A stretch of DNA of 64,000 nucleotides, taken from positions 24,994-88,993 of the forward strand of contig ADNK01000588.1 in NCBI GenBank assembly GCA_000320545.1, in the 5' to 3' direction. The notes under the pieces are model-generated. The model had not been told where the DNA came from. It ran no database searches and was given only the letters and a program-made list of their open reading frames with translations. A program made the translations under genes and the position numbers. Source of the DNA: Bigelowiella natans CCMP2755. Lineage: Eukaryota; Protista; Cercozoa. The stretch's first letter is position 1, and each line of letters starts with the position of its first letter. Of the stretch, positions 1,680 through 36,967 are shown in pieces.

Positions 1680-4596
<2,917 letters not shown>

Positions 4597-5021
4597 GTCC
4601 GATTATTGACCAAAATTGGTCCCCTCAGCCGCCAGGGGGGAGTTGGGGGGGGGGAGGGCGGAAGCTGCTCCCGTCTCGTTGCTTGGAAAGTTGGAAATCA
4701 CATTTTCTTTAAATGCTCTAATACAGGCCATTTTTAGATATATTTTCGGTTATTTCTTTGTCGCAGGTCTTAAATGGAGGGAGCCGCTCGCGGAATCGCT
4801 CGCCACTGGTCCAGATCGATCTACATGTGTAACTTGTTCTTTCGGGAGTTACGCTTCTAATAATTACCAGATTCCAACTTCCCTCCCCCCCCCCCCTCTC
4901 CCCCAATATGCACCGAATGTGACACGTGAGTGTTCATCGCGTCTCTGCTGTTGGTCATTCGGAACACTGCTGCGCTGTTTTATTTTTGGGGAGAGTTATT
5001 CTTGGGGCCCCGGCGGTCCGA
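4597..5021. promoter_or_regulatory. Probable bidirectional promoter between the FOXRED2-like paralogs
   Basis: Only about 425 bp separate two divergent start codons; no specific motif identified. Confidence 0.5.
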
Positions 5022-6194
5022 ATGGGGGGACGAAGCGCTTTTTTGCCGCTGCTCTTGCTTGGGCTCGGGATCGTGGGGGGGGCCAAAAAGCAGCGTAGCA
5101 AAGCGGGAGCTAGTGACTACTGCGTCATTGGGGCGGGTCCCGCCGGTGTCCAAATAGCCTATTTCCTCCAGAAAGCATCCCTCAGCTACGTCGTCTTTGA
5201 GAGGGAGTGGGAGCCAGCCAGCACATTCAGGAAATACCCGCGCCATGGACGCTTGATCTCAATCAACAAGCGCTACACGGGGCGCAACGGCTCCGAGTCG
5301 CAGGCGCATCGAGAGTACAATCTGCGGCACGACTGGCACTCCTTCCTCACCACCACCGCCGAGCCCGCAGCAGGGGGGGATGCGGCCGATGCGGGGGTTG
5401 ATGAAGATCTGCCCACTTTCCAGCAATTCTCCGAGAGATACTTCCCCCTTGCGGAAGAGTACGTGGCCTATGTCACCGAGTTCGTTCGACGCACAAAACC
5501 TCGAATCAAGTTTGGCCGCAACATCGCCGACGTCCGCCGCGTCAGGAGAAGTCACCCTATCAACGGGAACATCACGGCAGCAGCCGCCAACATGGAAGGG
5601 GGTGCAGCAGCAGCAGCACCACCACCACCACCAAAAGGGCATGAGAGCGACGGCAACGAGGGAGACGAGCTCTACCACTTCCAGCTCCGCGTTGAAACGC
5701 TGCCACGACAAAGGAGACGGAGGCCCAATAAAAACGGGGTTGTGGTGACGGAGGGAAGAGGGGCTATTAAGAATGAGAAAGCAAAAGAGGAGGAGGGGGA
5801 GGGGGAAGAGGGGGGGGCACACCGCAAAAATAACCTGCCCCTGTCGCAGCAGAAATGGTATTGCAAACGATTACTAGTCGCCAGCGGCATGCAGAAGGAG
5901 ACAAGTCCCTGGTGGAACGGTGTGGAATTGACAACTAGCTATGGGAACCACGATATCGACCCTTCGCATTACCGTAACAAGACCGTCGCGGTTGTTGGGG
6001 GGGGGAACTCTGCGTTCGAGGTGATAGGGGCGATCATGGGAGAGGCGGCCAGCATTCGCCAGTGCGTACTGTTAGATCAGCACAATCCCAACGAGAGTGT
6101 AAATATATCTCCTCTCTTCTTGTCCCACACACACACACACACACACACACGCATACACACACACGCACGCAGAGAAAATGACAGCGATGAAGCG

Positions 6195-6243
<49 letters not shown>

Positions 6244-6728
6244 CTGGGAGATTGAATCAACACCTATATTTTATCCCCCCGCCCCTCCCCCCTTTTTTTT
6301 GTTAAACCAAAAATCCTTCTCTCCACCCATGCAGGTATGCCCGGGAGAGAAACATGGCTGAGAACACCCACTATCCGGGGTCGCTTCGATCGGCCAACGG
6401 TGCCGCACTAGACAACGAGCCGGTGCTGCGCACACAAGACGCCTTCTTCCTGCACCCATTTCCCCTCCGCCATATCAGCATTGAGCGGGAAAGCTACCAG
6501 GGAGAGGAAAAGATCTGCCTTAAACCCTCCGAAGGGAAGAGGAAGAAGAATGACACAGGGTCATGGTTGGGTCGGGTGGAGGAGGCGCTGCTGCGGCGAC
6601 GGCGGCACTGCTTCGATGTGATTATTCGTTGCCTCGGCTTTGCGTTCGATCCTGCGGTGCTGGGGGGGCTGGCGAGGCGCCTCCAGTTCAAAACCCAGAA
6701 TCAGATACCCAAGTGCGTGACTGTGTGC

Positions 6729-6759
<31 letters not shown>

Positions 6760-7458
6760 TGTGTGTGTGTGGAGATAGAGATAGAGAGAGAGTGAGAGCG
6801 AGAGAGGTAGGTAACAGTGTTACATATTAAAAAAAATCCTAGTCCGTCCTCTCTAACCCCTGCCCCCCTTCCCCTCCTTTCTGTAAACATGCTCCTGCAG
6901 ATACCCTAGCATCAACAATCGTTTTGAGGCCTCGGGGCTCCCCCACCTCTTCTTCCTCGGGTCCAACGCACATGCGCTCGACTTCAAGGAATCGTCGGGG
7001 GGGCTGGTGCATGGTTTCCGCTACCAAGTCAGTAATTTCTCCTCATTGTGTAAACGTTTGGTAGCAGTAGCGGCTATTTGTCATCGTCGCAGTGATGGTG
7101 GTGATGATGATAAATTATAGGTAGTAAGGAAGGGGGAGGAGGGGGAGGGGAGGAGGATTCTCCACTAGCGCTTGAGCGATCATTCTGCCGATCTTCATGA
7201 TTCAGCTGCTTACCCCCCACCCCCTGTTTTGTTTACTACCCGCCGCTGCGCTGTTGCGCATAGATCTTGAATCTCTTCCGGCATCTCCGGAGGCGATATC
7301 ATGGGGTGCCTTGGCCGCATAAGACCCTCACGCTTGGCGAGGACTTCAAGCAACATCTCATCTATCGATACGGTGAGCGTTTGCGTTGAGTTGTGCGTGG
7401 GGAAGAAAGACGGCACGAGCAAGGGTTGGGGGGGTGGGTGTATTATATGATTCATACT

Positions 7459-7503
<45 letters not shown>

Positions 7504-8521
7504 AGTGTTATAGTGTGTATAATACAATACTCTAAGATATACACACCATCGCCATACGTTAACCACTGGCGGCCATAACTTCTCGCTTTTCCTTTTTTTG
7601 TTCTGTTGTCCCTCCACCCTCCCCCCCTGCTCCTCGCCGCAAACCCCCCCTTCGCCATCCTCCATTGCTTCCTTAGGCACGGCCTCCTCTCTCTACCAGA
7701 TGTTTGGCGTGCAATGTGACGTCGCAGTCATCACGTCGCGTGAGGGGGGGGGGGAAGTCGTTTATTTGTACGATGTGGTGGAACAGGATATCGACGCGTT
7801 TCTTCGAGACATTTTTGCTCCCTCCCCCCCCCCAACCGAGTACCTAACGCTCTCGTTCGAGTACATGCCGGAGATTGAGAACAAACTAGTGTGGGGGAAT
7901 AGCGGCTCGAAATACGCAAGTGACAATCCGGCAAAACCGCACAACAACCAGGTCGTCGTCGTCGTCGTCGGAGGAGGAGGAGGAGGAGGAGATGTGAGAT
8001 GGGACAGCTGTTGCGGTGGCATGATAACATAGAATAAAATATGGCGTATTCACACGTGCATCAATCGCTGTGCTCATCAGTTTGTCCACCCTACAATACG
8101 CTACTGGAACAAGGAAGCGCCGGTCGCCTACAAGGTACACTGCTGCTTAAAGCCAAAGCTGCCTCCGCTCCCGTTGTCATCACACATGCGGCCTCGACAC
8201 CGACGGCCATTGGAAAGTGGGATTGAATGCACGGATGTTGTTAATGACGCACGTGTTGTGTTCTTGCTATCTCCGTGTGTTTCTGTCTATGCGCGTAGAG
8301 TGTGGAGGCCTATGCGGAAGAGCAGCTTGTTCCGCGAGCGACGGCGGAGCTGTATCTAGTAGAGGACCTGAATCTCAACTATCGCAATCCAGTGCTGCAC
8401 CTGCGGCCTCTTGACCGCTTCCTGCAGCGCATACGAACAGCTGCCATCGTCCGCCCTGATCCAGAGTGAGCGACGTGACATGCTATAAGTTGTTATTGGT
8501 CTAAATGCCGTCTATAAATGT

Positions 8522-8561
<40 letters not shown>

Positions 8562-8830
8562 CCTTCTCAGTGGAGGGGACGCGAGTCTTTAGCCTTCATC
8601 AAGATCAGGATAGATTCTCTTCTTCAAATTTCCGAGCGAGCAGCGGCGTGTCATTATACATTATTATTCATTTACGATTATTTATGCTCGTCCCCCCCCC
8701 CCCCCCCCCCAGGTACTCGATGTCCTGGTTTTGCGATTGGTGCGAGGAGCCTGATCCTGCTTGGCGTGTTGCGTTGCGGAGACGCTGTGGCGATGACCGT
8801 CAAAACGGTGTATGCAAAGCATTGCTGTGA
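5022..8830 (+). CDS. FOXRED2-like FAD-dependent oxidoreductase, paralog B (about 8 exons)
   Basis: Signal peptide MGGRSAFLPLLLLGLG; DYCVIGAGPAG; NLRHDWHS; VGGGNSAFE; ENTHYPGSLRSAN; SSGGLVHGFRY; collinear with paralog A to the C-terminus CKALL*. Confidence 0.9.
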
Positions 8831-9218
8831 CGAGAATACTATGAATGTACGTTGCCACGCAGCCTCAATTGAGCGACAAGTCACATCGTCATTGTTATAG
8901 AATTATTACAGCGACCGAGCTATGTTATATTGCTTCGAATATATGTGTATAAATGCACTACATCATCAAAGCAACAATAACGTAGCTCTACTATGGCTGC
9001 TGATCGAATGGCGTTAGCTGAATTAGCCGCAAGCGCGCGTGCTGCGCCCAGTGCATACAGGCAGCTGAACTAGTGAAGCTGCATGATTTCATGTATGTGA
9101 CTAACGTATAACACGGTTCCAGACACTGCATATAATTTATTAAGCGAATTTCGTGCATTGCTATATCTGACACATACAAGCAGCTTCTAGCTGGCTTTGA
9201 GGCCTCATATATAGCTTC

Positions 9219-9419
9219 TCAGAAATTATACGTCTGTCGCGACCCTCCCTTGTTGAGCTTCTCAGTGCCCTTCCCCCAGGCGGCCTCTCCGACGCGTGAC
9301 CTGAAGGAGGGAGAGCAGGGGGGGAGAAGATGGAGAGGGAGACCAACAGCATGGAACATGGTAAACACGAATATTTATGTGAAAATTAATGCAAACGCAA
9401 ACATATACTCACGCACTTG

Positions 9420-9501
<82 letters not shown>

Positions 9502-9584
9502 ACACCTTCGGTTTATATATATATATATATATGTACGTTTCAGGAAGAGCTTCTACGATGTCGTCCACGTGCTGCAATTGTACG

Positions 9585-9621
<37 letters not shown>

Positions 9622-9622
9622 T

Positions 9623-9678
<56 letters not shown>

Positions 9679-10073
9679 TGTGTGGAAGGAGAGGTCACTA
9701 GCTTTCCAATCAGCATCCATAAATGCACGAACAATTACATGATCCAGCTGGAAGCCCAGCGTGCGGTCAAAACCCTTAATCTCACCCAAGGTGTTATAAA
9801 GAGAGACGAGGTAGGATGCGCCGCTGCCAGAATCACCAACAGCTGTTACGATATCCCTGGTGGCGGTATTGATGATGAGGGGGGAAAGGGAGGGTGATGA
9901 GTGAATGATATGTAGTAGAAGATGCAGAAGGTGGAAATGAAGGTGGAGATGATGATTAGGACGCGGGGATTTGCTTCTTGGGTCAATAATTCCGAAAAGC
10001 AACAACCTGGCAAGATCTGTATTATTTGAGAGTTTGCTGTAGAGACTATGGTCCTCGTCCATCACGTAACTGA

Positions 10074-10114
<41 letters not shown>

Positions 10115-10123
10115 CAATATCAG

Positions 10124-10155
<32 letters not shown>

Positions 10156-10497
10156 TATTATTTATAATATTTGACGTACCTGAGCGCCCTCCCTTCGAAG
10201 ATGCCCCCCCCTTCCCTGGAGGACTTGGCGAAGCCATACCTGCCACGGTGGGTCGCCGGCGTGGAGAAGACAGAGGGGGAGGGAGGCAGATGTAAGTTAC
10301 ATCGACGAAGATGATCATCAATGTAATGATGATAATGATAATGGTGATGATGATGATGAGGGAGGACGAAGAGAAACAAAAGGAAGAGATTGAGGCAAAC
10401 GGCACTAGAACCATCATCACAACTACTCTCCGTATTACACAAAATGGCTCTTAATCAATCAATACAGCAGTGAAAACCAATCGCTTGCTAGAGGGAA

Positions 10498-10549
<52 letters not shown>

Positions 10550-12223
10550 CACACACACACACTGATTCGTCCCTATTAAACAGTTCCTCCTTCCCCCCGT
10601 GCAGAATATCCTCATCATCTGTGCATGCTTGTTATTACCAGTGCATTTTGGGAGTTTCCCCCTCTTCGGCGAGGTCGGCAATGGCCTGTTTCGAAAGAGT
10701 ATCATCGAGAGGAGGTGAGGCAAGCAGCAGCAGCAGCAGCAGGAGGAGGAGGAGGGAGAGGAGGCTAGGATTCCACTAGAGGGTGATGATATTCTCTCTT
10801 AACGTCTTGTGCGACGATAACGTCGCTGCTGCTGCTGCTGATGATGATGATGATGTTGGTAGTCATCGTCGACACGATGAATGTCGTTGCTGGAGGGGGC
10901 GGGAAAAGGCTTCGTAGCTACCTGCATAGCCGCCTCGCGAGAGTCCTCAGGAACGCGGAGAAGATGCCTGTGTAATGTATTATACATAAATATTTCATAA
11001 ATACGTTATATCTCTGAAATGTACGGTAAAATGATGACCGACCACTAGACCCCTCCCCACCCCCTCTCTCAGCGAAAGTGAATCATTTGTGAGCCCCTGG
11101 GCAGCATCGTGCATTGCGCACGCGCTGCATGATCATCATCATTATCGTTTGTATGTTCGTTATCATTTTCATTATCATTATCATCGAAGCAGCTATCGTG
11201 TACTACCCCCAGATCCACGCTCCATGTTCTCTCATCATCGTCAGCTTTCGCCCAGGTTTCTCCTTCGTCCCCCACCGCCCCTCGGAACGGGCATAGAATC
11301 GACGCACGAACCCCTTCACCCACCTGTGCAATAGAGCGTTGTGTGCGTGTGTGCGTGCGCGTGCTCGATGGCAATGCAATAATATCACGGTCAACGGTAG
11401 AAGTGGCCGTCGTCATCTCATCGTCGCTGTCATCCGAAAACTCACCCGTCTCGCTTCTCAGCGATAGGAAAGCTCGGCTCCCACATCTCGCTTCCATAGG
11501 CGAAGATCCACAGATCCTGGGAAAGTAGCATGTAGGATTAGCAGAGAATACAGTCTTTCGATGCCGCCTATCGCTGCTGCAGTGGCACCTTCTCGTTCCT
11601 GGCCATTTCTAGTGCGGCCTCGCCACAGATGGGCTCGATGATGTCGTCCTGGGTCGATTCGGTCCTCTCTAAGTTTTCCCTGGAAACAATGGGCGACGTC
11701 AGAAGATATTAGGCTCACACTACCAGCCCTCCCATCTCTACGGGGCCAAAAGGAAAACAATGCATTATTTGGTGAAACAACATATACAGCACACGAAGAA
11801 GTACCAGTCCCATTTGGGATCCCCGAGGATGACCTGCTCCATTTTCAATGTCGTATTTCTCTTTGTGTTCTTCATCCCTCGGAGCTCGCCTCCAAAGAAC
11901 TGTTCGTCGTTTTCCATGAATACTTTTGTCCCTCTAGGCGTGAGAATCTCCCTCGTGCCGCTCGGGTATTCTCTTTGGGAAGGGGGGCAGACGCGCTGAA
12001 GCTGGTGCTGCATTCGAATATGCGGGGGGGCTTTCCCAAATGTTGTATGGCCGCTTCGCATCCTATTCCCGGCTGCTATTCGAGCTGTGCCGAGCCGTTG
12101 AGGGTTTATTGAGGCTGCATAAAATATTACTACTAACAGAGCCGTGGCTGTCGTCACAATGGCTGCGTTGTTCGGGCTCAGACTGCGCCTAGGAGCTCCT
12201 ACGCGCCTCGTATTGGTCCACAT
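9219..12223 (-). CDS. ChaC-family glutathione-specific gamma-glutamylcyclotransferase-like protein with bipartite presequence
   Basis: Spliced exons give DLWIFAYGSEMWEPSFP, WVKGFVRRFYARSEGRWGTKEKPGRKLTM, SYVMDEDHSLY and AVGDSGSGASYLVSLYNTL, which follow the ChaC pattern; hydrophobic N-terminus followed by an Arg-rich segment. Confidence 0.8.
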
Positions 12224-15396: not shown

Positions 15397-15810
15397 ATGA
15401 GTTCGGGATCTACTCGATCGCCAAAGGTGGTGGTGGAGGCCAAATTTATGAAGAGGAGCTGGGAGGTCGATGGAAGCACCAGCGTCATCAATTTGAAGCG
15501 AAAGATTCAAGTAAGGACGTATCTTCGCTCTTGCAAGATACCGAAACGCCCTCAAGGAACTAAACATGTCACGTTGTGCAGGAACAGACTCGAATTCCAG
15601 TTCTTCACCAGATTCTATTGGCTAATGGGAAGCCTCTGCTTCATGGTAAACATGCCGTTTGCTTGATACCGTCGAATTTAGTTCTTCAAGCCCTATTCTC
15701 AATGTTTCTAGGAAATTCAAAATTGTTGGACTGTACATCGTTGGTGGTAGATGAGGCTGAGGAAAAAATAGCTAATATCACGCTAACGACGTGCCTTGAA
15801 CCAGTGACGG
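15397..15810 (+). other. Ubiquitin-like domain (N-terminus of the fusion)
   Basis: WEVDGSTSVINLKRKIQEQTRIPVLHQILLANGKPLLHGNSKLLDC resembles the ubiquitin pattern [44 protein letters not shown]. Confidence 0.8.
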
Positions 15811-15969
15811 TACTGCAGATGATCGTTACAAAAACTTGGGAAAATGAGACCTATTAATGCATTCGATAGGATAATATCGACAAGATCGTCCGCCAGCTTG
15901 ATAGTGAGAATAGTTTTTTCCGGGAAGAAGCAGTAGTTCTTCTGGGTATCGTTGTTATGAATGTAATTT

Positions 15970-16042
<73 letters not shown>

Positions 16043-19000
16043 ATCCGCTTTCGCTAGACAAGGAATCATAGATATCTTGCAATTTCCAGTAAATATAAAC
16101 TTGATTCATTTAGGAATGATAGCGACTCGCTCAACGAATGAACGAGACTTAGTTTTGATGCATAATCCCTTCCCAAAACTGAACCTCATTTGCAAGAAGG
16201 TAGTTAGCCAAAACAAAGCTTATTGTCTTTGCTAACTCGCAATAATTAAATAACTTTACAGAGACCGTCCAAATCTACCCTGCAAAGCTGTGCACGATGT
16301 AGTTTCCCGACGGAAAAGATAGGCTGATCAATTAATTGCTGTGTATCTGAAATAGGTATCGCAAGTTTGTGCTCAGGAAAACCAGAGCCAAAACTGAAAA
16401 TGGTAGTGTGATTAATGATGAAGTTCACATAATCACAGATAATTCCCCAAAGGTGAAGCCAGCAATAAAGATCTTGTCGGATTTGATCACATTTTCGGTA
16501 GTTGACCTCGCAAATAAACGAGAACGAGTATATAATTAACGAATTTGTGTAATTCGTCAGGATGCAGAAATTCTTCACCATAGCTGTCGATCACTCATGT
16601 ATCTATCAAACGGTTCTCCATCAATATCAGTGTAGTTTTCGGAAAATCAGTCATCTACTTTTAATTCTTAGGCGATGATGAACTAGTAAAAGCTATATTT
16701 GATGAAGACGACGGTAGATCTTAATTTAAATCATGATATCTTTGAAAACGTGTAATTTCGGCTAGGACGGAAAAAGGGAAGCACATTCTGTCGTCGACTA
16801 GTGGAATTGCTTGGTAAAAAGAGCTAGGCGAGTGTAATAGAAGACAATATGTTAAACAAAATGTTTATAACAATCAGATGGACATGATAATGTTGCTGAA
16901 AGTGTGCTAAAGACACTATCTAATTTCACAATTGCGGAGAGGTAGTACCATAGACTTCATAATTTAGTAACATAGGCCTAATATGGGTACTATGTCGATC
17001 AGTGACGACATTAAGAAAACTCCAAAGAGGAAGAGGTATCATCCCAGACATCTCGCCAAAATCTTGGATTCATAATAACATAATTATTTTGATCATAATA
17101 GTTCCCAGTATGCACCTTAGCCTCTTACTTATCTCATCAAAACTCAAACTTACTTTGTAAAGGTCAATTAGTGGTCCTGAAGATCATTCTCAAATTCTAT
17201 TGGAAGCTGGGGTGCTGCCAGCATTTCAGGGGCTGTTGAAGGTGGCTTAATATACACAATCACAATAATCCCTCTTTATAAAGGCTCTTTCATAATAAGG
17301 AGAAAGCAAGAACTCTGTCACTGAAGGCTCTTTGCTGCAGAGTAATATCTATGTTGGTGCAGCACAAAAGGTTAGGGAATTAAGTTTGTTCGAAGTAGGA
17401 AATGTGTTTGATGTGTGAAATTCTAGGTGTATCTCCATCATCATAAGTTCTGGGCTTCTGCGCACCATCCTTGGATTATTTCGACCTAAAAAATCGTTTC
17501 TGCCAACTCCGATCACATCCCCTACGAAGGCATTTTGCATCTTATACGTGAAACCATTCCTAGAATAGCTGAATCCTGGAATATTAAAGGTTCCGCAATG
17601 GTCTTCAGAATCAATGGACAACCTCAGGGACTCTCCCGAATTCATCGCAGAGGGTGTACTTCTCGAGGCAGTCTGGGTGATGGTGAACATCACCTGCGAT
17701 GGTCAGAACTATCCCTTTGATCTGCTTTCCAAATTTGGTCAACCTAAAAAAACATCATCATACGCACAGGAGGTGCAGAGGATAAGCTAAAAGCCTTACG
17801 GTTGGGAATGATAGGTCTGCGTTTTCCGAAGTATTACTTAATTTCACTGAAAATCTTCTCATTGATTAAATGCGAACTAAAGATGCGTTGTGCCTACTAC
17901 TGGGAGAGCTGGATGAAGAGATCCTACTTCTAGGTGGCGCACGATAATTACTGCCAGAGATGTGTAACATTTTTTACGTATCTACGTAACAGCATTGGAA
18001 GGAATCGACAATTTGTTAAAAGCTGGAAAGGGTCTTGCAAACGTAATCCTTGAGGATGAGGAAGAATCATCTTCGAGCGATCCCCCCAATGGTATTGACA
18101 GCCCTTCCAAGTTGTTCGGGTGTCATCTGAGATTGAGTTTTTAGTTCTGGAGGAAGTGCGTTTTAAAGGCCTAGACATGATGCTACAGCTTCTCACCGAC
18201 TCAAACATTACTCATGTGGTAACCTGACTCTCAACTGCAATTTCGCAACTGGCATATAACTTCAGTTTTCCATCGTCAAGGTAAAGCAGAAAGTAGCTAG
18301 CATAATGACCCAGTACTTTCCAGAAGAAGCCAAAAGTTTTGATGCTGGTATGGAAGATCTTGAGGGTGAGCAAGGAGAAAGCGGTACTAACAAAATATAC
18401 AAATATTTAGTTAACGAATGTAACTTTATGAGCCCGATAGAAAATGTTCCTCTCTGAAATTATTATCATCACATCAGAAATGCCGAAAGAAAGGAGTTCG
18501 AGCGGCAAGCCACCTCCATTAACAATTCCAGAGAATAAAACAGTAATTTCCACGACCCAGAAAGATGGCAATAATTTTGCAGGCGAAGGCGAGGAAGCCC
18601 ATGAGAGTGATGATGACGATGAATCTGTGCACAGACGTAACTGTTCTAACGTTTCGAAGAAGCAGATAGAGTCTCATCACTGAATTTTATTACAGCTTCA
18701 ACAGAATCAATCAAAGTCGTAGTTAGATGCCGGCCATTTATAAAGGTAATTTCAAAACGTTGTTTAATGGTAATTACACTTAATGGTATACATAGTCACA
18801 TTATATCTTCATTATAGAACGAATCAAAAGACTGCTTGGACGTGATTCATGTGGATTTGGTATCATCATTCGCCTACAAATTTCCAATCTAAAGAACAAA
18901 ATCAAAATACCCTGATTCGTAGGAGTCGAATAGAATATTAGTAAAAGATCCCAACCAGTCTGGATTTAATCCTGAGGTAGATCATCCATGGAAACAGAGT

Positions 19001-22000
19001 TGTGCGTGCCTCATAAAATTGTCCTTAAATACAGATGAAGGAGAGTTGGAGAAAGTTTTCGTTTGACACTGTGTACGGAAGGGTAACGTGAAACATTGAA
19101 TATTAATGAAAGCCAAACTCCGACAAAATGCAACACTAATTGAGCTTCAAATAATCTCTAAAGGAATCGAAGCAGAAAGATATTTACAAGCACTCAGTTT
19201 CAAAAATGGTAACTCGGAAAGCCTACGTACAAATTGCCTTTTATATAAGTATTTTCAATTTCTTACACAGGTTCGCAGGCTCTTGAAAGGATTCAATTCG
19301 ACGTAATTTCCTTGTTGTGATAGTGTTTTTGCTTTAATGATGACAAGCTATCCTTCATTTACTCAATAACACAGAATATTCGCCTACGGCCAGACATCCT
19401 CGGGCAAAACCCACACCATGATGGGTAATGTCATGCTCGCCAAGATGAAAGCATTGAGCGCTCTCATCGATTGGTATATTTTTTATATATTATATCTTAA
19501 AGGAGAACTACAAGATGACCATTTGGAAGGTAGTTTACGCCGTTTCATTTCTCAGAACGGATATCTTAGTATTGTTAATTCAGGAATCACCCCTCGTCTC
19601 ATACGAAGCTTATTTTCCTTGATTGAGAAAGGTTGGTATGCAGCGAAAATATTCAATGTCGTTTCAAAATCCGTGTCATCGCCGTTACACGCAGGAAAGG
19701 AACGAGGAAATACGTTCCTCATCACCCTATCGTACTTAGAAATATACAATGAGAAGGTAGATATGAAATCATGAAATTACCGGTAAAGTGGATATTTGAC
19801 CCGATATGCCCAAATAGGTTTACGACTTGCTCACGAGACAAAGAAAGCGCGGAATACAGGTACTGCGATAATTACCTTTTAAAACTATGGTGTGAATACT
19901 CCTTGGCATCTTCAGGCCAGAGAATCGTTACAGATACGTCAGAAAGGAAACGGTCTTCTTTCCTGCAGCTCCCCAAAATCTTTGAGTGACATGTACATTG
20001 ATGTTACAGGCTTCCATGTTCCAAAGCTCACAAAGCATGTTCGGCAGATTTTGTTCAATTATCCTTAGCTGTATGTCATTTCATTGAGAAGCGAGAATTT
20101 TAATTTTTCCTCCTTAAAGGTTATCACGGACGATCAGCAAATGCTTGCATTTATTGAAATGGGTAGGAGCTCCTGCTTCATTTTTCTTGGGTTATATAAG
20201 TTTGCACTAATTGACAAAGGTTCTCGGGCAAGATCTACTGCAGCTACTGCATTAAATAGTGCCAGCTCGAGGTAAACTAGCACATCGAAGGGAAAGCAAC
20301 TCCCAAATTCACGTTCGCAATTGTACAGATCACACTCAATGCTCATCATCAATATTGAGAAGGGTAGCAGCGACGAGGTATGCAAGGACTCAATATTTTA
20401 TCTGTAAGATTTTTCGTTACTGTATTCTCTCCAGAATATGAGGAACATCGTGAGTGCTAAACTGAATCTTGTCGATCTGGCTGGGAGTGAAAGGTACAGC
20501 TCCATCACCATTAATGTGGCTTAGTGGAATGGGTCTAAACAAGTTTCGAAATTGTTTAGATTCCAGGATCAAGACATGAAAACTCAGAAGGAATCCACAT
20601 CCATTAATCAGTCGCTCACAGCGTTAGCAGGGGTGAGGCAAATCATCTACTCTCTAGCATTAGCATTAAAACAACATCTTATTCCTATATCTGGAGTAAA
20701 CAAATTAAACACTAATTAAGGTTATCGCCGCTCTCACGTCAAATAAAAAAGGTTGTTCAACTTGATATCGACAACCTAGTACATTAATCGTACTCTCTCA
20801 CCGCGTAGGAACGTTTGTACCCTACCGCAACTCGGCATTGACAAAGCTGCTCCGCGATTCCCTTGGTAAGTCATGTTCTCATCGATTGCCAAGTAGTGAG
20901 CTAAAGATGTTTCGTAAATTGCATTTTATCAGGCGGAAATGCATCAACTTTGATGTTTGCCAATATAAATCCATGCGATCGAAATCTAAATGAAAGCGTA
21001 AGAGTTTCGCTTCACGACGAGGATAACCCATAGCTTTAACATTATAAATTTTGTACCTCAACTTAAGGTTTCTACCCTCCGTTATGCTGCAAGAGCTAAA
21101 AAAATTATGAACAAGCCAAAAGGTAAACTAATTTTGCGAAATATTTTGACGAATCAATTACCACTAGTTCCCATCACATCTAATTTTTCTCCGCCCACAT
21201 AACAGTGAACCAAAATCCGAAGGACGCATTACTCACAAAGCTTCAATCTGAGATAAAATCTCTACGGCGGTAGTCGCATTTGGTATAAAATGCGGCTGGG
21301 TCAAGCCGTCTTGATATTCAGTATTATTTTCAAGGCTGCTCGACAAAAAAGACAAGTACATCGAAAAAATGCAGGTCCAGACACCGAAAATAATCGTCGA
21401 GGAACCTTCGGAAGAAGAACGTCGGCGGGTTAGCAATAATATCAACCATCCCAACGAAGACATATTCTCTGATTCGAATGGAATTTCCGTTCCTAAAAGG
21501 CAAAGATCGAGGCCGAGAAGCATAGAGAATTTGTGAATCAGGCAATACGTAAATACGTGGGGCTGGAAATACCTTTTATCCCATCATAAAATCAGCAAAA
21601 ATAAGGCTGCAAGCCTGCAATTTATAATCTCTATCCTTGAAGGTGCGTGAAGATCTCCTCAACAGACTCAACGATGCAAAGTCTTCCTTCATCCAAGGGG
21701 GTATATATGTATGTAAATATTCCTCGATGCATAGAAGTGAGAGATATGGGATAAGAAATACCTTCGTCTCAACATGTTGCGCGAGTCTATGTAGATACCA
21801 AATCATCAGATTAATTTACTGAAAGTTAAAAAAAAAATCGATTTGACATTGTGTATTTGAAACGCAGGTTCACCACGGGCACGAGGTACTAGAGGTGCAT
21901 TTTATGGATACCTAGGTTCTGAATGAGTAGTTCATGTACGTAGACTCTAGGGGAAGTAGACGCGGAGGCAGTAGAGCTGTAAGAAGAAGAATGACAGGTA

Positions 22001-25000
22001 TCCTCGAAAACATAACAGCGAGGAAAACATAGAAAGATGGGGGAAATCAAGGAGGAAAACCATGCCTGAATATGTCTTTAAAAAAATTCTATCAGTGGTT
22101 GCAGCAGGCAGCCTTGTTCACACGATTCCAGCTCGAGCTATTGACGGTAATTAAGTGAAATGGAGCTAAAACTAATTAAAATAAAAGATGGTACGTCTTC
22201 GAATCTTCCTTGCCTGAAGCTGAATTTGAATTTCCTAGATGATGACGCTGAAAGTCCCACAAACAATCTACCTGGGATAGATCCATCGATACTTCGATCG
22301 GTGCGATGATTCCTCTGACAGCAGTGAGAAGGCCAGAATGGAAAATTGACCAACATCATCAATTTCACATTTAGGCTCCTCATTTGAGTCGTGAAGACTC
22401 AGCCCCAGCGCCAGGAACAGGGTTCGTTATCACTTTTGAAATACGAATTATGCTATGAGAATATCAACAGTATCTGGATTTTCCTCAGGTACGGACGAAG
22501 GGGAAGCAGACGTCTCAGCATCTCACAAATGGTGCGGTGCGAAGATTGCACATCTATACCTATCCATCTATCATCCAAAAAGCAGCCTTCCATCTCTTGT
22601 CTCCTTGCGCTTTCATACCAAACTTTTAGGCCCCACAGATTGGCATGCAAGATGAAATTCAAGCAGGAGTTTTCAAGGCAATGCGAAAAATGCGGAGATC
22701 GAAGGTCTGGTGATGTTCGCAACCTCAGATAATATCATGACATGTATTGATCCAATCCATTTAACAATTTTCTAAGGCAAAATTCCAGTCACAAACCATA
22801 GAGTTGAAAGACATACTCGAGTAATGCCCTGGACACTAGTGGGAAGCACACATGATTGGTCATGATGAATCACTCGCCACTGTGTCGATCAGAATGACGA
22901 AAGTGAGAAAGGTGGAGCTGGAAACAGATTTAAAGGAATCCGAAGAGCAGAAAAAAGAACTAGAGGAGGTTCTTAGCACACAAAAAACAAAAGGAATCTT
23001 ATTTGTTTTTAAACGTACGAAAATTATAATTACTCATCAGAATTTGACCTCGACTCTGAGTATAAACGCCGAGCTGAAAAGTAAACTAGAAATCGCAAAC
23101 GAGCAGAACGAAGAGTAAGAAAGCCACAGACAGCCTAGACTGACGACTTATTGCGAAGATCTAAATTAAAATCGTACACTTTAATCCTCAGGCTTCAAAG
23201 CGAGTTGACAGCTCTAAGAAAACAGTTGCTAAATGTCACCATCACTCATAAGTCTGACGAGCTTATCATGCCCCGATCCCCTCGGAATGTGACCAAAGGT
23301 CTTCATTAGACAATAATTATCTTCGAACACATATGAATAATTTTACATATAAATTTTGTAAATATTGAATTGATTGAATAAGGGGTCGAAGAAGGCTCCC
23401 TTGTCATGGAAATCAAGGTGAATTTTCTCGCACATATTTCGAAATAGAGGAGAAGCGTTTACTTCTAGATCACTGAATACGTGTGCAGGCTTATTCACAA
23501 TATGTGAACACTCTTCTGGCATATCATCCACTCCTCATGACGACTCGCACGTTGCCCATTCAACCGACGTGCGTACTGTATTTTCCTCAAATGAGATATG
23601 TTAGGGCAGAATATTGTTATTTATACTATATCAGTGATATCGAAGACTTCGCCGAAAAGATGAGAGATGGGATTCTACCTGCAGTGCTCATAAACTTTGC
23701 GGTATTTTGGTTGTTTTGAATTGAAGAACTATTTTTCATAATCATTCGCGCCTCTTTTATTGTCGCAACTTTCCAGGTTCCAAACACGATCGATGAGAGA
23801 GTATTGAATAAGCCAACAGCTTCGAAGCCTCTCTCCGAAAAGGTCATCCGAAATCTGTTGGAGCGATGACAAAACCTGTCTTCCTCTGATGGAAGCTTGC
23901 AACCCTCAGGAACGAAGGGAGAACCTGATCCTTGTATTTGAGACATGCAAAGGGATAGGTGTTGAGGTGACAATGACTTTCAGTTTATTACCTCTCAACG
24001 ATGTGGATATTATCTGAAGCAATTTGCCTTCTAAGGTTGGAGACCTCACAGTTGACGCACTCTTTCCTACCGGATCTGTCGCGAACACAAATAATATACA
24101 GAATCCAGTGCCTAGAAAGTCTTCAACGGCACGCCACCAATCATCTGCGGTAAGGAAAGTGCTACATTGAACGTCAAAAATTTACACTTGTGGCTCATTG
24201 ATGGTGTTTGCGATGGTTAAATAGGTATCACTAAAAACTGTGTGCACGTTTGCCTTCCGTATCATTTCCTTCATCACTCTCCGCCGCAACGAACTCTTGT
24301 CCCATCCAGAGGTTTCTGATTCAGATCAATGTCTCCATCGTGTTGGCACTCTGCCGTTTATTACCTGCATCCCCCAAAAGAATGTTTCCTTTTTGAAGTA
24401 GGCGACATCCATTCTCAATACACTCGCATATTTTCTAAGGTCAGAGAAGCTGGAATAGCGCAGGATGATAACGACAGCGAAGACCTCCTCCCATCCAAAA
24501 TTCTTCTAGGTGACTCTCCAAATATTTGCAATTCCAGATGTAAATTCTCAACAATTACTGAGATCGACTTCTTGCTTCTGTAGGATGGACAAATCACATG
24601 CTTGGCAAACTTCGATCAAATACTCAAATCTCAACCATTGTGACATCTGACGCCTTCCCATCTCTGCCTCTCTCGCAGTCCTCATTTTCCGCTAAAGGTG
24701 GCATTGAGAATGCCCTAGTGATGTCGAAATGATGATGCTAATATAAGGGGCAGTCGAAGTAACCTCCGTTGAAGCTAATGGATTTTAACACTTTACTGTA
24801 GGAAACAAAGTTCCAGCTTTTCTAGTTCTGGCAATCTCTCAAAAAATTAGAGGACCCCAAACTGTAAGTTGGCTCGCATCCAAGATGAAGGTCCCTTCTT
24901 TTGCAGAATCGCGGGAATCCGATGCAGGGAGCGGCATCTCACCAGCTGACTTCGCAGCAGCCGGGGAGATTCTTCCGAAAGAGGTGACTGTAATTGTTCA

Positions 25001-27275
25001 CTCGAGAGATTGGAGAAGATTTATCTTGCTTCGCTGCTGCGATGCAGGCAAAGACGTTCTTGATCAATGAGGATGACTTCGAACGGAAGCATGACAAGGA
25101 AACGGAGATGTCCCTGAATAGACTTGCTCTGCTATTTACCGGTCGGTTCTCCACTAGCAGGAATTTCCTAGAGATGATGATTTTTGTGGCGCATGATTAG
25201 GAGCGGTTCTGAAGCATAGCTTCCCACTAAAGTTCAATGGACTCCACGGGGATATGGGAGGCCATCCGGAGGTTCACAAGGCAATCAAAGTTTTCCAGCG
25301 ATGGTGTCGCCGCTAATAAATGAGAAATGAATTCGTTGTCAGAGTAAGACAGTGCGGAATACTGTAAATCCCGTTGAAAAGTTGATTAGACGTGACAGGA
25401 AAGGTGAACAAGCGGCTAAGGTTTGAGAATGCGCAGAGTGTGTAATAGTAAAGTATGTTTCCTTTCAGCTGGGGGAAGTATTGTAAGCGTAAGTGATGAC
25501 ACCGACATTGACGAAGATGAAGGTACAGGGTTTATCATGGGTGGCAAACACGATTTGATTCTCGCTGCACTTGATGGCAGATGGTGCTGGTGACGTCGAA
25601 CCGAGCCAAGAGAAAGCTGTCAGGTCTTCTTTCTGGAAGGAAGAAGTCAACCCGGTTCGGATCGTCTGACTGTTTGCTTGCAAAACGTGCAGGATGTGGA
25701 TCAATAACATCGGGGTTCAGAATCGGTATATCCACAGGCTCCTCAACGCCTGCTCCAATGGGGTATGAAGCCATGTACGATTCACAGATGCTGATGATTC
25801 CATCGATTCAATCATGCGTAGGTACTGCTTCTTCGGCTACTTGACCACATCGCAAAATCGGTGACACAGCAAGCTTCGTCTAATCCACCCGTTGTTCGTA
25901 GCATGTCTAATGTTGGTATTAATTGCTTCATGTAGTCGGTTGTTGATTGGAAGAAAGCCTATCCGAAGCCAAGTAATGTCGATTTGACGCCTCTGTTGTT
26001 TTCAAGTGTTAATTGCATTCCCCACCACTGCGAATACCAAAGGTAACAAGTTTCGAGAGCTTGCAAACTGCCAACAGTTCATCGAAAGATGCAAGGAAAC
26101 TCCATTCAACTTCAAGGTATGTTTCTATGTGAGCGGTTTAGCACCGGAAGTGATAATGCACGTTGCAGGTAGGAACAACCACTGGACAGGATATAAATGA
26201 AAGGCACTCAAAGGTTGATATCTTGCGTAAATCACCTCTTAATTTGCATTTGCCCGACGACATACTCAACCATTTCTTTGCAGCACGTGCTCTCCGTGAC
26301 GTGGCAGCTCAGAAAGTTTCATATGTAGGATAGCCAGCGAACGATTTAGTTGTCTTTAGCATTGGTGGGGTTACTGGGATTTCTGTACAGGTTCGAATTC
26401 CTAAAGAGTATCTACGTGCGAAAGTTCGGCGGCGGTCAAAAAACAGCTGAATCCAAAATAAGGATTGATGAGGGGAAGATCGCGCAGTGGTAGTCATATT
26501 CTTCCGACTGTGCAACAATTCTAGGCAGTTCTGAAATATTTGCATTTGTAATACAGGTGCATGTCGACAATCGAGACTGCATTAGATGAGAACGGAGGGT
26601 GAATAAATAAACTATCATTAAGATTGCTTTTCGCATTTAATAATTACAATTTGTATAGATATCCCCCTGAAGCTTCGCACGTTGACGTAAGATCATCCTC
26701 GTTTATTTTTTGTACGCACAATAAATTTACCATATCTGTATTATTCCTTTTTCAAGCTGGAAGGAATTGGAAGTAAAATAAAAGGCTTTGACGAGAAGGT
26801 CATCTCAGAGCTATGTAGATTGCTACTTAGCTGATCTTCAGGAATTCATGAAATCAGACTTTGAAGACTGGCTTGTATCTCCTGCTCCTCATTTGGGCGA
26901 AGGATCCAGAAAGCATAGACTGGGCGAATGCTTCCACTGGTAAATCCGCCGCTAAAATAAAGGCTAGGTGGCTCAATAAATTTCGGAATTGGTGCTAGGT
27001 GTCACGCGCGATCAAAGACTGGGTAATGCAACGTATGCCATCTCCGTCGCACGTAAAATGGGATGCACAATTTTTTTGCAGCCGGCCGACATCATCAAGG
27101 TAGTCGAAAAGCAACTTTCAGATACGTTCGATGCTAGTTGAGCTTCGCCTTCGAGACAAAAACACATGCGCCAGCACATTGTATTAATTGTGTTGTTGTT
27201 TGTTTCATTGCGTGTGTGCGGCAGGTGAGACCAAGAATGATCCTAAGTTTTGTTAGTGCAGTGCTAGCTACATGA
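15397..27275 (+). CDS. Multidomain fusion: ubiquitin-like - importin-alpha-like ARM repeats - kinesin motor - coiled coil - fimbrin/plastin actin-binding core
   Basis: Dozens of short GT-AG introns. The module junctions were traced exon by exon with phases matching and no stop; not every internal exon was resolved. Ends [16 protein letters not shown] (TGA 27273-27275). Confidence 0.8.
15871..18365 (+). other. Importin-alpha-like armadillo repeats (about ARM3 to C-terminus)
   Basis: REEAVVLLGMIA..RDLVL, SLCSGKPEP, VKPAIKILSDLI..DAEILHHSCRSLMYLS, FCRRLVELL, EAVWVMVNIT and KVASIMTQYFPEE are collinear with importin-alpha. Confidence 0.85.
18696..21270 (+). other. Kinesin motor domain (kinesin-2-like neck)
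   Basis: [99 protein letters not shown]. Confidence 0.97.
23489..27275 (+). other. Fimbrin/plastin-type tandem calponin-homology domains (CH1-CH4), no EF-hands
   Basis: [126 protein letters not shown]. Confidence 0.93.
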
Positions 27276-27339
27276 TCTAGATGATTGTTGCTCATGCCTG
27301 TCGCTCACATTTCTAGGTAGATATTCATTTTGTGTTTGT

Positions 27340-28080
27340 ACATGCATGACTAGAAGTGCGTCTAATCTAGCAGGTCACACATTTGATCGAAATCAGTTCG
27401 TTTTGCATTGCCCAAGCGATCTAGCGATCGATGCGATGTGAAATGTCATGCTTAGACATTCATGTGTTGATTGCACATGCTAGCATGGACGTTTAGACGT
27501 GGCGAAAAAAAACGAAATGCACATGCACAGCTAGTCAGCGAAACTTGCACCTAGCAAGCAAGCTAGCTAAAAACCATCATCTCTAGATCTCTTCTTGTCT
27601 AGAGTATTGTCTAGATTGTGCTTGCGCGGCATGCTAGCATGCTAGCATGTTGCGTGCACACATTGATCTCTAGCTCTACACAACGCTAGAATGGCTAGAC
27701 TCACAAGGTCTGCTAGTCTGGCTAGCTAGCTAGCTAGGTAGATAGCTAGATAGTGATGATGCCATTCAGACTCACTAGCTCGATTAGATGTCTAGATGAG
27801 ATGGCATGCACAATCTGGTTGCCATAGCTGCGTGTCTAGATGTGCAGACATGATGATGATGGCTCGTGAAGCGTTTAATTTTGCGATGCCCAACTAGCCA
27901 ATCACCTTTTTAGAGACCTAGCTAGCTAGCTAGGAGAAAGTAGCGTCAAGATTTGCGCGCATGTCACAAAATGAAGATAGCTGGCAAACTGGTTCGCTTG
28001 CTAACTTGCTCATACATCTAGCTAGCTAGACATGTTGAGATGCTAGCATGCTGCTAGCTAGCTAGAATGCCGAAGAAATA
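27340..28080. other. TpA-restricted, CTAG-rich intergenic tract 2 between convergent genes
   Basis: The large majority of TA occur as CTAG, CTA or TAG, with GCTA runs; CATG and TGCA are abundant. Confidence 0.85.
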
Positions 28081-28289
28081 GTTCGTAGTGTCGAACCGCA
28101 TGCTGTGCACTGGTCATTTTCGAGCACTTCTATGTTGAGTTTCGGGGCACATTTTGTGAATGTAATTTGTGCAGCTATATAAGATATCGATCCGCGTGAA
28201 TAAATGTCTAGATGTTGACACTACAGCGATGCAGCTGAAAGCAGCAAACGGACTGTGTGTTCTGCCGCAAACGACTATCAAATCAAAAG

Positions 28290-36175: not shown

Positions 36176-36967
36176 ATGGCTGACAATCAAGGGAATAAGA
36201 GGACGGAAGGTCCCGCCACCACCGCCCAGGATGACGACGACTCGATTTCACTCATCATCTATGGAACCATCGACGCAGAAATGAATAGCCCCATGGCTAG
36301 CCAGAACAGCACTTCCGACGATGCAAAGTCAGTGCAATCAATGGGAGCTGAGTCCTCGCATCAGCAATCTAGCGGCTCGTCGAGTCCAGATAACCGCTAT
36401 GAAACAATCTTGGGGTGTCCGAACATGACACCTGAGGGCCCCGCTCCACAAGTGAATCAAATCTCATTTAAAGATGACCGGATTCAAGATGCAACGAAGA
36501 GCATTAGCGACCCCAGTCGAGAATACAATCCATCCGAGGCACCCGGCGATATGATGGCAGCTAACATCCCTGAATTGAGGACCCAAAGATCGTCAAGCAA
36601 ACTTGAAAGCAGAGGAACGAAGGAAGTCATTAAGGTCCCCCATACTAAAAAAAAAGGGAAGAAGAGAAATAGAAGGCGTCTGGGATGCGAAAACTGTGTG
36701 ACGGGAAAGTATAAATGCTCAGCAGTCGTCGACAAAAAATTTCCTTGCCAGCAATGCATTAAGGACAAATGTGAGGAGCTTTGTGATGGACCATATGATC
36801 CACGTAAGCACACCTTTTTCAATCCACGACTTGAAAGGAAAGGCACGGGTAAGAGGTTGCGTGACACATCTCTCTCGATGGAAGGACATCGTTGTCGCAA
36901 GATACGAAAAGGGAAGCGCTGCATCCGACCTTTCAAGCATGGTGGAAATTGCAAATACTCAGGATAA
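36176..36967 (+). CDS. Zn(II)2Cys6 (GAL4-type) zinc-cluster protein, intronless
   Basis: KKKGKKRNRRRLG followed by C-x2-C-x6-C-x9-C-x2-C-x8-C; second Cys/His motif RCRKIRKGKRCIRPFKHGGNCK at the C-terminus. Confidence 0.8.
   Translation: MADNQGNKRTEGPATTAQDDDDSISLIIYGTIDAEMNSPMASQNSTSDDAKSVQSMGAESSHQQSSGSSSPDNRYETILGCPNMTPEGPAPQVNQISFKDDRIQDATKSISDPSREYNPSEAPGDMMAANIPELRTQRSSSKLESRGTKEVIKVPHTKKKGKKRNRRRLGCENCVTGKYKCSAVVDKKFPCQQCIKDKCEELCDGPYDPRKHTFFNPRLERKGTGKRLRDTSLSMEGHRCRKIRKGKRCIRPFKHGGNCKYSG

What the first reader, a model, noticed from the sequence alone, without database searches (positions are those of the whole stretch)
15397..27275. One gene appears to fuse UBL, importin-alpha ARM repeats, a kinesin motor, a coiled coil and a fimbrin actin-bundling core
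Seen: manual splicing links all modules in frame. The importin-like C-terminus (..KVASIMTQYFPEE..MEDLE) uses a GTGAGC donor at 18366 and an acceptor at 18477 to continue into [22 protein letters not shown]. If these were separate genes, the unspliced stop (18457) and the next ATG (18480) would be only about 20 bp apart. Known: importin-alpha binds cargo, kinesins move on microtubules, fimbrin cross-links F-actin. Inference: a cargo-scaffold motor bridging microtubules and actin bundles, possibly relevant to filopodia or reticulopodia. I know of no described protein with this architecture.
Basis: partly seen in the sequence, partly recalled or inferred. Interest (0 to 1): 0.93.

Follow-up and report, generated by a model that had tools for sequence, protein, structure and literature searches.

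The report
Kinesin motor fused to actin bundler
A marine alga has one real, expressed gene that joins a microtubule motor to an actin-bundling module and a repurposed nuclear-import scaffold; a distant relative keeps the same layout, so it is a good but untested candidate for a motor that moves or cross-links actin filaments along microtubules.

Summary
The fusion is real. An 88-exon model (15397-27275, 1,871 aa) reads UBL, importin-alpha-derived ARM, kinesin motor, coiled coils, four-CH fimbrin core. 83 of 87 introns are seen in JGI transcripts. An intron-poor ortholog from a marine metagenome (1,951 aa, 5 exons) carries every domain joint inside single exons; its motor is 74% identical. The motor's catalytic motifs are intact. 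It lies in a lineage-specific kinesin clade whose family is unresolved, with a kinesin-2-like neck. The ARM module lacks IBB and four groove tryptophans, so it is probably not an NLS receptor. CH3-CH4 are better conserved than CH1-CH2. Best reading: a probably plus-end-directed dimer that binds and moves or cross-links F-actin along microtubules, like plant KCH kinesins but built independently (about 60%; nothing tested at the bench). A link to reticulopodia is unsupported. I found no paper describing it. The scan's other notes cover only this same stretch. Side result: this genome has a KAP3 gene that a 2026 preprint did not find.

The parts
15397..27275 (+). Whole coding region, 88 exons, 1,871 aa; transcript 3' end reaches at least 27407
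   Evidence: RNA contigs
15421..15797 (+). Ubiquitin-like domain (aa about 9-88, exons 1-3), no C-terminal di-glycine
   Evidence: 38% over 40 aa to ubiquitin, 0/2000 shuffles; ortholog exon Pfam ubiquitin E 0.00095; 33% to ortholog
15870..18325 (+). Importin-alpha-derived ARM module (aa 93-495), starting at about repeat 3; no IBB; groove Trp/Asn kept only in repeat 8
18326..18697 (+). Acidic, low-complexity linker (aa 496-568), 21% identical to ortholog
18384..18477 (+). Intron that joins ARM to kinesin and removes the stop at 18455-18457
   Evidence: X1, X2, X4, L043, L047
18698..21106 (+). Kinesin motor domain (aa 569-912) with RCRP, P-loop GQTSSGKT, switch I SSRSH, switch II DLAGSE
   Evidence: 74% identical to ortholog
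21107..21700 (+). Neck linker, kinesin-2-like neck (NQNPKDALL) and first coiled coil (about aa 913-1000)
   Evidence: PDB hits KIF3A, KIF3C, OSM-3; E 0.027-1.1, weak; heptad scan
21868..22531 (+). Basic, probably disordered mid-region with conserved RRRMT and RRxSIS motifs; includes an 18-nt micro-exon at 21868-21885
   Evidence: (table 5c)
22630..23237 (+). Conserved basic helix and second coiled coil (about aa 1096-1212)
23489..25211 (+). Fimbrin-type ABD1: CH1 (folded in model) and degenerate CH2 (aa 1233-1546); no EF-hand family matched upstream of it
   Evidence: 31% and 28% to ortholog
25607..27272 (+). Fimbrin-type ABD2: CH3 and CH4 (aa 1617-1871)
   Evidence: (fimbrin/plastin chains, best E 8.5e-9); 47% and 45% to ortholog

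Best explanation
One gene makes a roughly 1,870-residue motor. Shown: the transcript, the domain order, intact ATPase motifs and conservation in a second lineage. Inferred: it dimerises through the coil after the neck and walks towards microtubule plus ends, because the neck linker and coil follow the motor as in plus-end kinesins. Its tail binds F-actin mainly through the conserved CH3-CH4 pair; the degenerate CH1-CH2 pair binds weakly or regulates. A dimer would carry two actin-binding tails, so it can cross-link actin to microtubules and slide or carry actin filaments outward. The UBL-ARM module hangs off the heads on a flexible linker and acts as a partner-binding or self-regulating scaffold, not as a classical NLS receptor.
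For: Single transcript. Ortholog with UBL|ARM, ARM|motor and motor|coil|CH joints each inside one exon. Motor 74% identical with all motifs. CH4 exon matches only fimbrins and plastins in PDB; ABD1 model's top four matches are fimbrin chains. ABD2 conserved more than ABD1, in line with ABD2 being the strong actin binder and ABD1 its inhibitor in human plastins (10.1101/2021.12.01.470822). CH-kinesins of plants move actin filaments on microtubules (PMC5852081). Stand-alone fimbrin and importin-alpha genes exist elsewhere in the genome, so these copies were free to change role.
Against: No experiment. CH domains can also bind microtubules or lose binding (own knowledge). CH2 is poorly predicted (pLDDT mostly under 50). 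Actin-contact residues of CH3-CH4 were not mapped. Direction is inferred from neck layout only. Intron 25404-25468 is retained in both JGI contigs, which would cut off CH3-CH4 in that form. Raw-read depth was too low to measure expression or isoform shares (17 reads).
Confidence: 0.6

Rival explanations
1. A flagellar or basal-body transport motor of the homodimeric kinesin-2 type, in which ARM and CH modules bind cargo or tubulin rather than actin bundles.
For: Neck exon's PDB matches are KIF3A, KIF3C and OSM-3. Grouping with kinesin-2 is not rejected (AU p 0.167). A preprint reports one divergent B. natans kinesin-2 beside euglenozoan KIN2A/B; I could not tell whether it is this gene.
Against: The motor is in its own clade (100/97) outside canonical kinesin-2 sequences. 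A canonical kinesin-2 (C2761) and a KAP3 gene (C2531) are present, so the ARM module need not replace KAP3. A full fimbrin core is not expected in an IFT motor.
Confidence: 0.15
2. A mostly static tether or organiser: the motor binds microtubules and the tail actin, fixing an organelle (nucleus, plastid) or the division plane, with little net transport.
For: Short coiled coils, bulky N-terminal module on the heads, plant KCHs also decorate fixed arrays.
Against: Motor motifs and neck are strongly conserved (74% and 65%), which fits active stepping.
Confidence: 0.17
3. A polyprotein-like precursor that is cut into separate UBL-ARM, motor and fimbrin parts, as with ubiquitin-actin fusions of this lineage.
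For: B. natans has many ubiquitin fusions (PMC6332867); linkers are long and poorly conserved.
Against: The UBL is divergent and has no di-glycine end in either species; no conserved cleavage motif is evident in the linkers.
Confidence: 0.06
4. Two or three neighbouring genes, read-through, or a misassembly.
For: The unspliced frame stops at 18457 and an ATG follows at 18480; gene callers split both the transcript contig and the ortholog into pieces.
Against: The joint is spliced in four data sets and is intron-free in the ortholog (P0126, P0006).
Confidence: 0.02

Closest known systems
Plant KCH kinesins (kinesin-14 with calponin homology domain, e.g. OsKCH1/OsKCH2)
   Same: One chain joins a kinesin motor, coiled coils and a CH-type actin-binding module; OsKCH2 carries actin filaments along microtubules (PMC5852081).
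   Different: KCH has one N-terminal CH and moves to minus ends. Here four fimbrin-type CH domains lie C-terminal, the neck follows the motor, the motor does not sit in the kinesin-14 clade of my tree, and UBL-ARM is added. A separate CH-then-kinesin locus exists in this genome (C1597).
Fimbrin/plastin
   Same: Four CH domains in two tandem pairs, homologous to the genome's own fimbrin and to solved fimbrins.
   Different: No EF-hand match, ABD1 degenerate, long insert between CH2 and CH3, fused to a motor.
Importin-alpha (karyopherin-alpha)
   Same: ARM superhelix with the C-terminal atypical repeat; all listed fold matches are importin-alpha, TM about 0.7.
   Different: No IBB, first two repeats absent, four groove tryptophans lost in both species, UBL in front, motor behind.
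Kinesin-2 (KIF3/KIF17/OSM-3) with KAP3
   Same: Neck motif of the N(E/Q)xPKDALL type; motor working beside an ARM-repeat module.
   Different: Family membership unresolved; ARM here derives from importin-alpha, not KAP3; canonical kinesin-2 and KAP3 are encoded elsewhere.
Plant armadillo-repeat kinesins (ARK; own knowledge, not tested)
   Same: Kinesin motor plus ARM repeats in one chain.
   Different: ARK repeats are C-terminal and there is no CH or UBL module.

Membership tests
Kinesin superfamily | Motor domain with P-loop, switch I and switch II | tested here: met
   Pfam PF00225 over cut-off in both halves; motifs at aa 663, 783, 818
Kinesin superfamily | Microtubule-stimulated ATPase and motility | not testable with these tools
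   needs purified protein
Kinesin-2 | Motor domain falls in the kinesin-2 clade | tested here: inconclusive
   Own clade 100/97, backbone unresolved; joining with kinesin-2 not rejected, p 0.167, but joining with kinesin-14 not rejected either, p 0.266
Kinesin-2 | Kinesin-2 neck signature after the motor | tested here: met
   NQNPKDALL; the only kinesin chains matched in PDB are KIF3A, KIF3C, OSM-3, at weak E-values
KCH (kinesin-14 with CH) | Single N-terminal CH domain ahead of the motor | tested here: not met
   Four CH domains, all C-terminal
KCH (kinesin-14 with CH) | Kinesin-14 motor | tested here: inconclusive
   Outside the kinesin-14 clade (97/92); AU test does not reject the union; neck layout is not that of kinesin-14
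KCH (kinesin-14 with CH) | Binds actin and microtubules at once | not testable with these tools
   needs co-sedimentation or TIRF
Fimbrin/plastin | Two tandem CH pairs of fimbrin type | tested here: met
   CH2 is degenerate
Fimbrin/plastin | N-terminal EF-hand headpiece (animals, fungi, many protists) | tested here: not met
   No EF-hand family at E 0.1 in the 875-aa piece that covers it
Fimbrin/plastin | F-actin bundling | not testable with these tools
   needs assay
Importin-alpha | Importin-alpha-type ARM superhelix | tested here: met
   pLDDT 82, Foldseek E 9e-16 to importin alpha 5; repeats 1-2 missing
Importin-alpha | IBB domain | tested here: not met
   A UBL stands in its place in both species
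Importin-alpha | Trp/Asn ladder of the NLS groove | tested here: not met
   Trp lost in repeats 3, 4, 5, 7; Trp-Asn kept only in repeat 8 (repeat numbers from own knowledge)
Cleavable ubiquitin fusion | Near-canonical ubiquitin ending in di-glycine | tested here: not met
   38% over 40 aa to ubiquitin, no GG end

The most novel reading that the evidence does not exclude
A plus-end-directed kinesin that carries its own actin bundler and builds or extends actin bundles along microtubules, switched by an importin-alpha-derived scaffold: an independent invention of actin-microtubule coupling, of opposite direction to plant KCH, founding a kinesin subfamily of chlorarachniophytes and kin.
Probability: 0.4. 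Interest if true: 0.88.

Novelty: new variant of a known kind. Interest (0 to 1): 0.76.

Why it matters
Motors that grip actin and microtubules at once are few, and the best studied (plant KCH) go to minus ends with a single CH domain. A conserved kinesin with a whole fimbrin core would be a natural, probably plus-end actin transporter and bundler that can be tested in standard gliding and co-sedimentation assays. It also shows importin-alpha reused as a non-import scaffold, and gives a concrete candidate in Rhizaria, where many kinesins are unassigned orphans (PMC13746701). The paralog series (motor + four CH + ARM; motor + degenerate CH pair; motor alone or with another head) lets the steps of the fusion be studied.

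Tried and rejected
2) Two-gene or misassembly reading: rejected by RNA contigs and the ortholog. 3) ARM as a stand-in for a lost KAP3 (prompted): dropped after finding five collinear Pfam KAP matches on C2531. 4) Linker exon against 1.84 billion representatives: three unrelated low-complexity hits. 5) Two scans of JGI metagenomes: nothing with the linker exon, only unrelated kinesins with the motor alignment. 6) Single exons against Pfam: mostly blank because exons are short. 7) First automatic gene models were wrong in ARM and CH regions and were replaced by hand, then checked against transcripts. 8) Alignment A2 mis-stacked the CH repeats and was not used. 9) No gene-order conservation with the ortholog's neighbours. 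10) Five paper searches on the architecture found no description; most subscription papers are not searched. 11) Kinesin family placement stayed unresolved. As the operators asked, the joined spliced model was not sent to any search tool: searches used single exons, natural open frames, or fetched transcript and ortholog loci by reference; the joined model was used only inside local scripts.

Full report
Setting. The window lies in a 91.4-Mb eukaryotic assembly of 3,736 contigs. Its size and intron-rich genes fit Bigelowiella natans (94.7 Mb scaffolded, PMC13746701), a paralog groups with Amorphochlora and Gymnochlora proteins, and earlier scan notes give the same name. The name is an inference; no tool printed it for this genome.

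The observation. I built a spliced model from the window in scripts: 88 exons, ATG 15397 to stop 27275, 1,871 aa, introns 50-168 nt (median 66), all GT-AG except three GC-AG. Laying four runs on 17901-23850 gave spliced contigs from three studies. X2 has one 5,551-nt contig that passes from the ARM exons through the motor and coils into CH1; X1 and X4 show the same ARM-kinesin joint. That joint is 18383|18478: a 94-nt GT-AG intron that removes the stop at 18455-18457. Model positions match the X2 contig at 14 anchors with a constant offset of 22 nt, which also fits a short 5' UTR ahead of ATG 15397. The raw-read run gave only 17 reads, so expression level, strand and isoform shares were not measured.

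A second line came from a JGI transcript contig (L043, 5,680 nt; sister contig L047) that covers 15756-27407 in one piece. It shows 82 and 83 of the 87 model introns exactly, corrected two of my exon ends, and differs from the genome at two bases and a 3-nt gap, so it may be another strain. It has an N gap, a non-canonical join near 19972 and one retained intron, which is why a gene caller split it into four pieces. Four introns remain unseen in these contigs: two in the UBL, 19953-20009 (partly retained in X1; supported by X2 and X4 offsets) and 25404-25468 (retained). The last is the weakest point in B. natans: retention would cut off CH3-CH4.

The ortholog settles the fusion. Searching with L043 pieces found P0006 (kinesin + CH, 37% over 90% of the query, E 2e-125) and P0126 (ARM + kinesin). 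They are adjacent on one 42.9-kb scaffold of a marine metagenome (L045; also in assembly GCA_977009605.1). There the gene has five exons and 1,951 aa. Exon 2 holds both ubiquitin and Arm matches, exon 3 holds ARM, linker and the motor up to the P-loop, and exon 5 holds the rest of the motor, the coils and all four CH domains. Every domain joint is therefore plain genomic sequence. Identity to the window protein: UBL 33%, ARM 34%, linker 21%, motor 74%, neck and first coil 65%, CH1 31%, CH2 28%, CH3 47%, CH4 45%. The first UBL intron is at the same position and phase in both. In the paralog tree this organism branches outside Gymnochlora, Amorphochlora and Bigelowiella (98/82), so the architecture is probably older than their split; its name is unknown.

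The modules. UBL: weak but significant match to ubiquitin, no di-glycine end, so an integral domain and not a cleavable ubiquitin like those in PMC6332867. ARM: 28% to the genome's canonical importin-alpha (E 2e-34); the predicted fold (pLDDT 82) matches importin-alpha chains (E 9e-16, TM about 0.7). It starts at about repeat 3 and has no IBB. Four of five groove tryptophans are gone in both species and only the repeat-8 Trp-Asn pair is kept. Motor: RCRP, P-loop, switch I and switch II are intact. Tail: CH4 matches only fimbrins and plastins in PDB; the CH1-CH2 model is confident for CH1, poor for CH2, and its best matches are fimbrin chains. No EF-hand was matched. Canonical importin-alpha genes and a stand-alone fimbrin exist elsewhere in the genome.

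The family. The motor forms a clade (100/97) with the ortholog, a close paralog on C1997, and a second class found in B. natans (C3119), Gymnochlora, Amorphochlora and the metagenome organism. That second class has no ARM, but its tail aligns along CH1-CH2 at 19-25%, so a motor-CH fusion probably preceded the duplication; the order of gains and losses was not tested. The neck resembles kinesin-2, but the backbone is unresolved and AU tests reject neither kinesin-2 (p 0.167) nor kinesin-14 (p 0.266) as partner. I do not file it as kinesin-2. The genomic paralog sequences in the tree were stitched from BLAST pieces and are rough. A preprint reports a divergent B. natans kinesin-2 and no KAP3 in this species, which suggested that the ARM module replaces KAP3. 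But five Pfam KAP matches lie in order on C2531, so KAP3 is very probably present and that idea was dropped.

How it most likely works. Inferred, not shown: a dimer that steps to plus ends, since neck linker and coil follow the motor. The tail binds F-actin through CH3-CH4, the better conserved pair; in human plastins ABD2 is the strong binder and ABD1 restrains it (10.1101/2021.12.01.470822). Two tails per dimer could cross-link filaments even if ABD1 is weak. The result would be transport or sliding of actin along microtubules, as shown for OsKCH2 in the opposite direction (PMC5852081). UBL-ARM rides on the heads as an adaptor or brake; conserved basic motifs in the stalk (RRRMT, RRxSIS) are candidate partners or kinase sites, which is speculation. 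I put this at 0.6, a static tether at 0.17, a flagellar role at 0.15, a processed precursor at 0.06, and an artefact at 0.02. Nothing here ties it to reticulopodia.

Novelty. It works like a KCH but fails the KCH layout test, and fails the IBB and tryptophan tests for importin-alpha. Searches of the paper library found no description of kinesin joined to fimbrin or importin-alpha in these organisms; that library misses most subscription journals. Class: new variant of a known kind. Distribution is poorly known: two species for the full layout, and the protein searches could not see proteins of its full length.

Limits set by the operators. The joined spliced model was left out of all database searches; exons, natural open frames and fetched loci were searched by reference, and the joined model was used only in local scripts. 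The read layer was given 5,950 letters.

Noticed in passing
G000:C2531 about 4400-11100, minus strand (L036): Intron-rich KAP3/KIFAP3 gene: five Pfam KAP matches in order (profile 12-101, 187-214, 262-285, 305-348, 548-584), each weak alone. bioRxiv 10.64898/2026.05.12.724483 says KAP3 was not identified in B. natans; probably a missed gene model.
   Followed up: partly
G000:C1997:39328-43200 + (L038); C2 piece at 36660-36810 (L041:7161-7310): Closest paralog of the motor (59-88% per exon) with no ARM or CH detected within about 10 kb upstream and 15 kb downstream; a C2-domain exon (Pfam E 0.0014) lies 2.6 kb upstream on the same strand, possibly a C2-kinesin fusion.
   Followed up: partly
G000:C3119:2600-7750 - (L061); P0007, P0008, P0009: Second class of this kinesin clade: motor + long coil + degenerate CH pair that Pfam does not detect; conserved at 49-58% across Gymnochlora, Amorphochlora and the metagenome organism.
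   Followed up: partly
G000:C1597:11495-13819 + (L022): CH domain, coil, then a kinesin-14-like motor on one strand: a KCH-like layout outside land plants, where PMC5852081 calls KCHs exclusive to land plants. Single-gene status not checked.
   Followed up: partly
window 27277-28107: 38 CTAG words in 831 nt against about 3 expected, just 3' of the gene; reaches into the 3' UTR.
   Followed up: partly
window 15397-27275 versus L045:7579-14158: 87 introns in 5.6 kb of coding sequence here (genome mean about 8 per gene) against 4 in the ortholog; only one position is shared exactly.
   Followed up: partly
window 17530, 21542, 25281: Three GC-AG introns, all seen in transcripts; micro-exons of 18-33 nt (21868-21885, 19503-19529, 26659-26686).
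   Followed up: yes
window 19953-20009 and 25404-25468: Introns retained in some assemblies; either retention breaks the frame, the second would give a protein without CH3-CH4. Possible regulated isoform or unfinished splicing.
   Followed up: partly
G000:C2761:78500-80250 - (L037): Canonical kinesin-2 with NEDPKDALL neck and KIF3-like stalk, convergent with a SET-domain-like gene.
   Followed up: no
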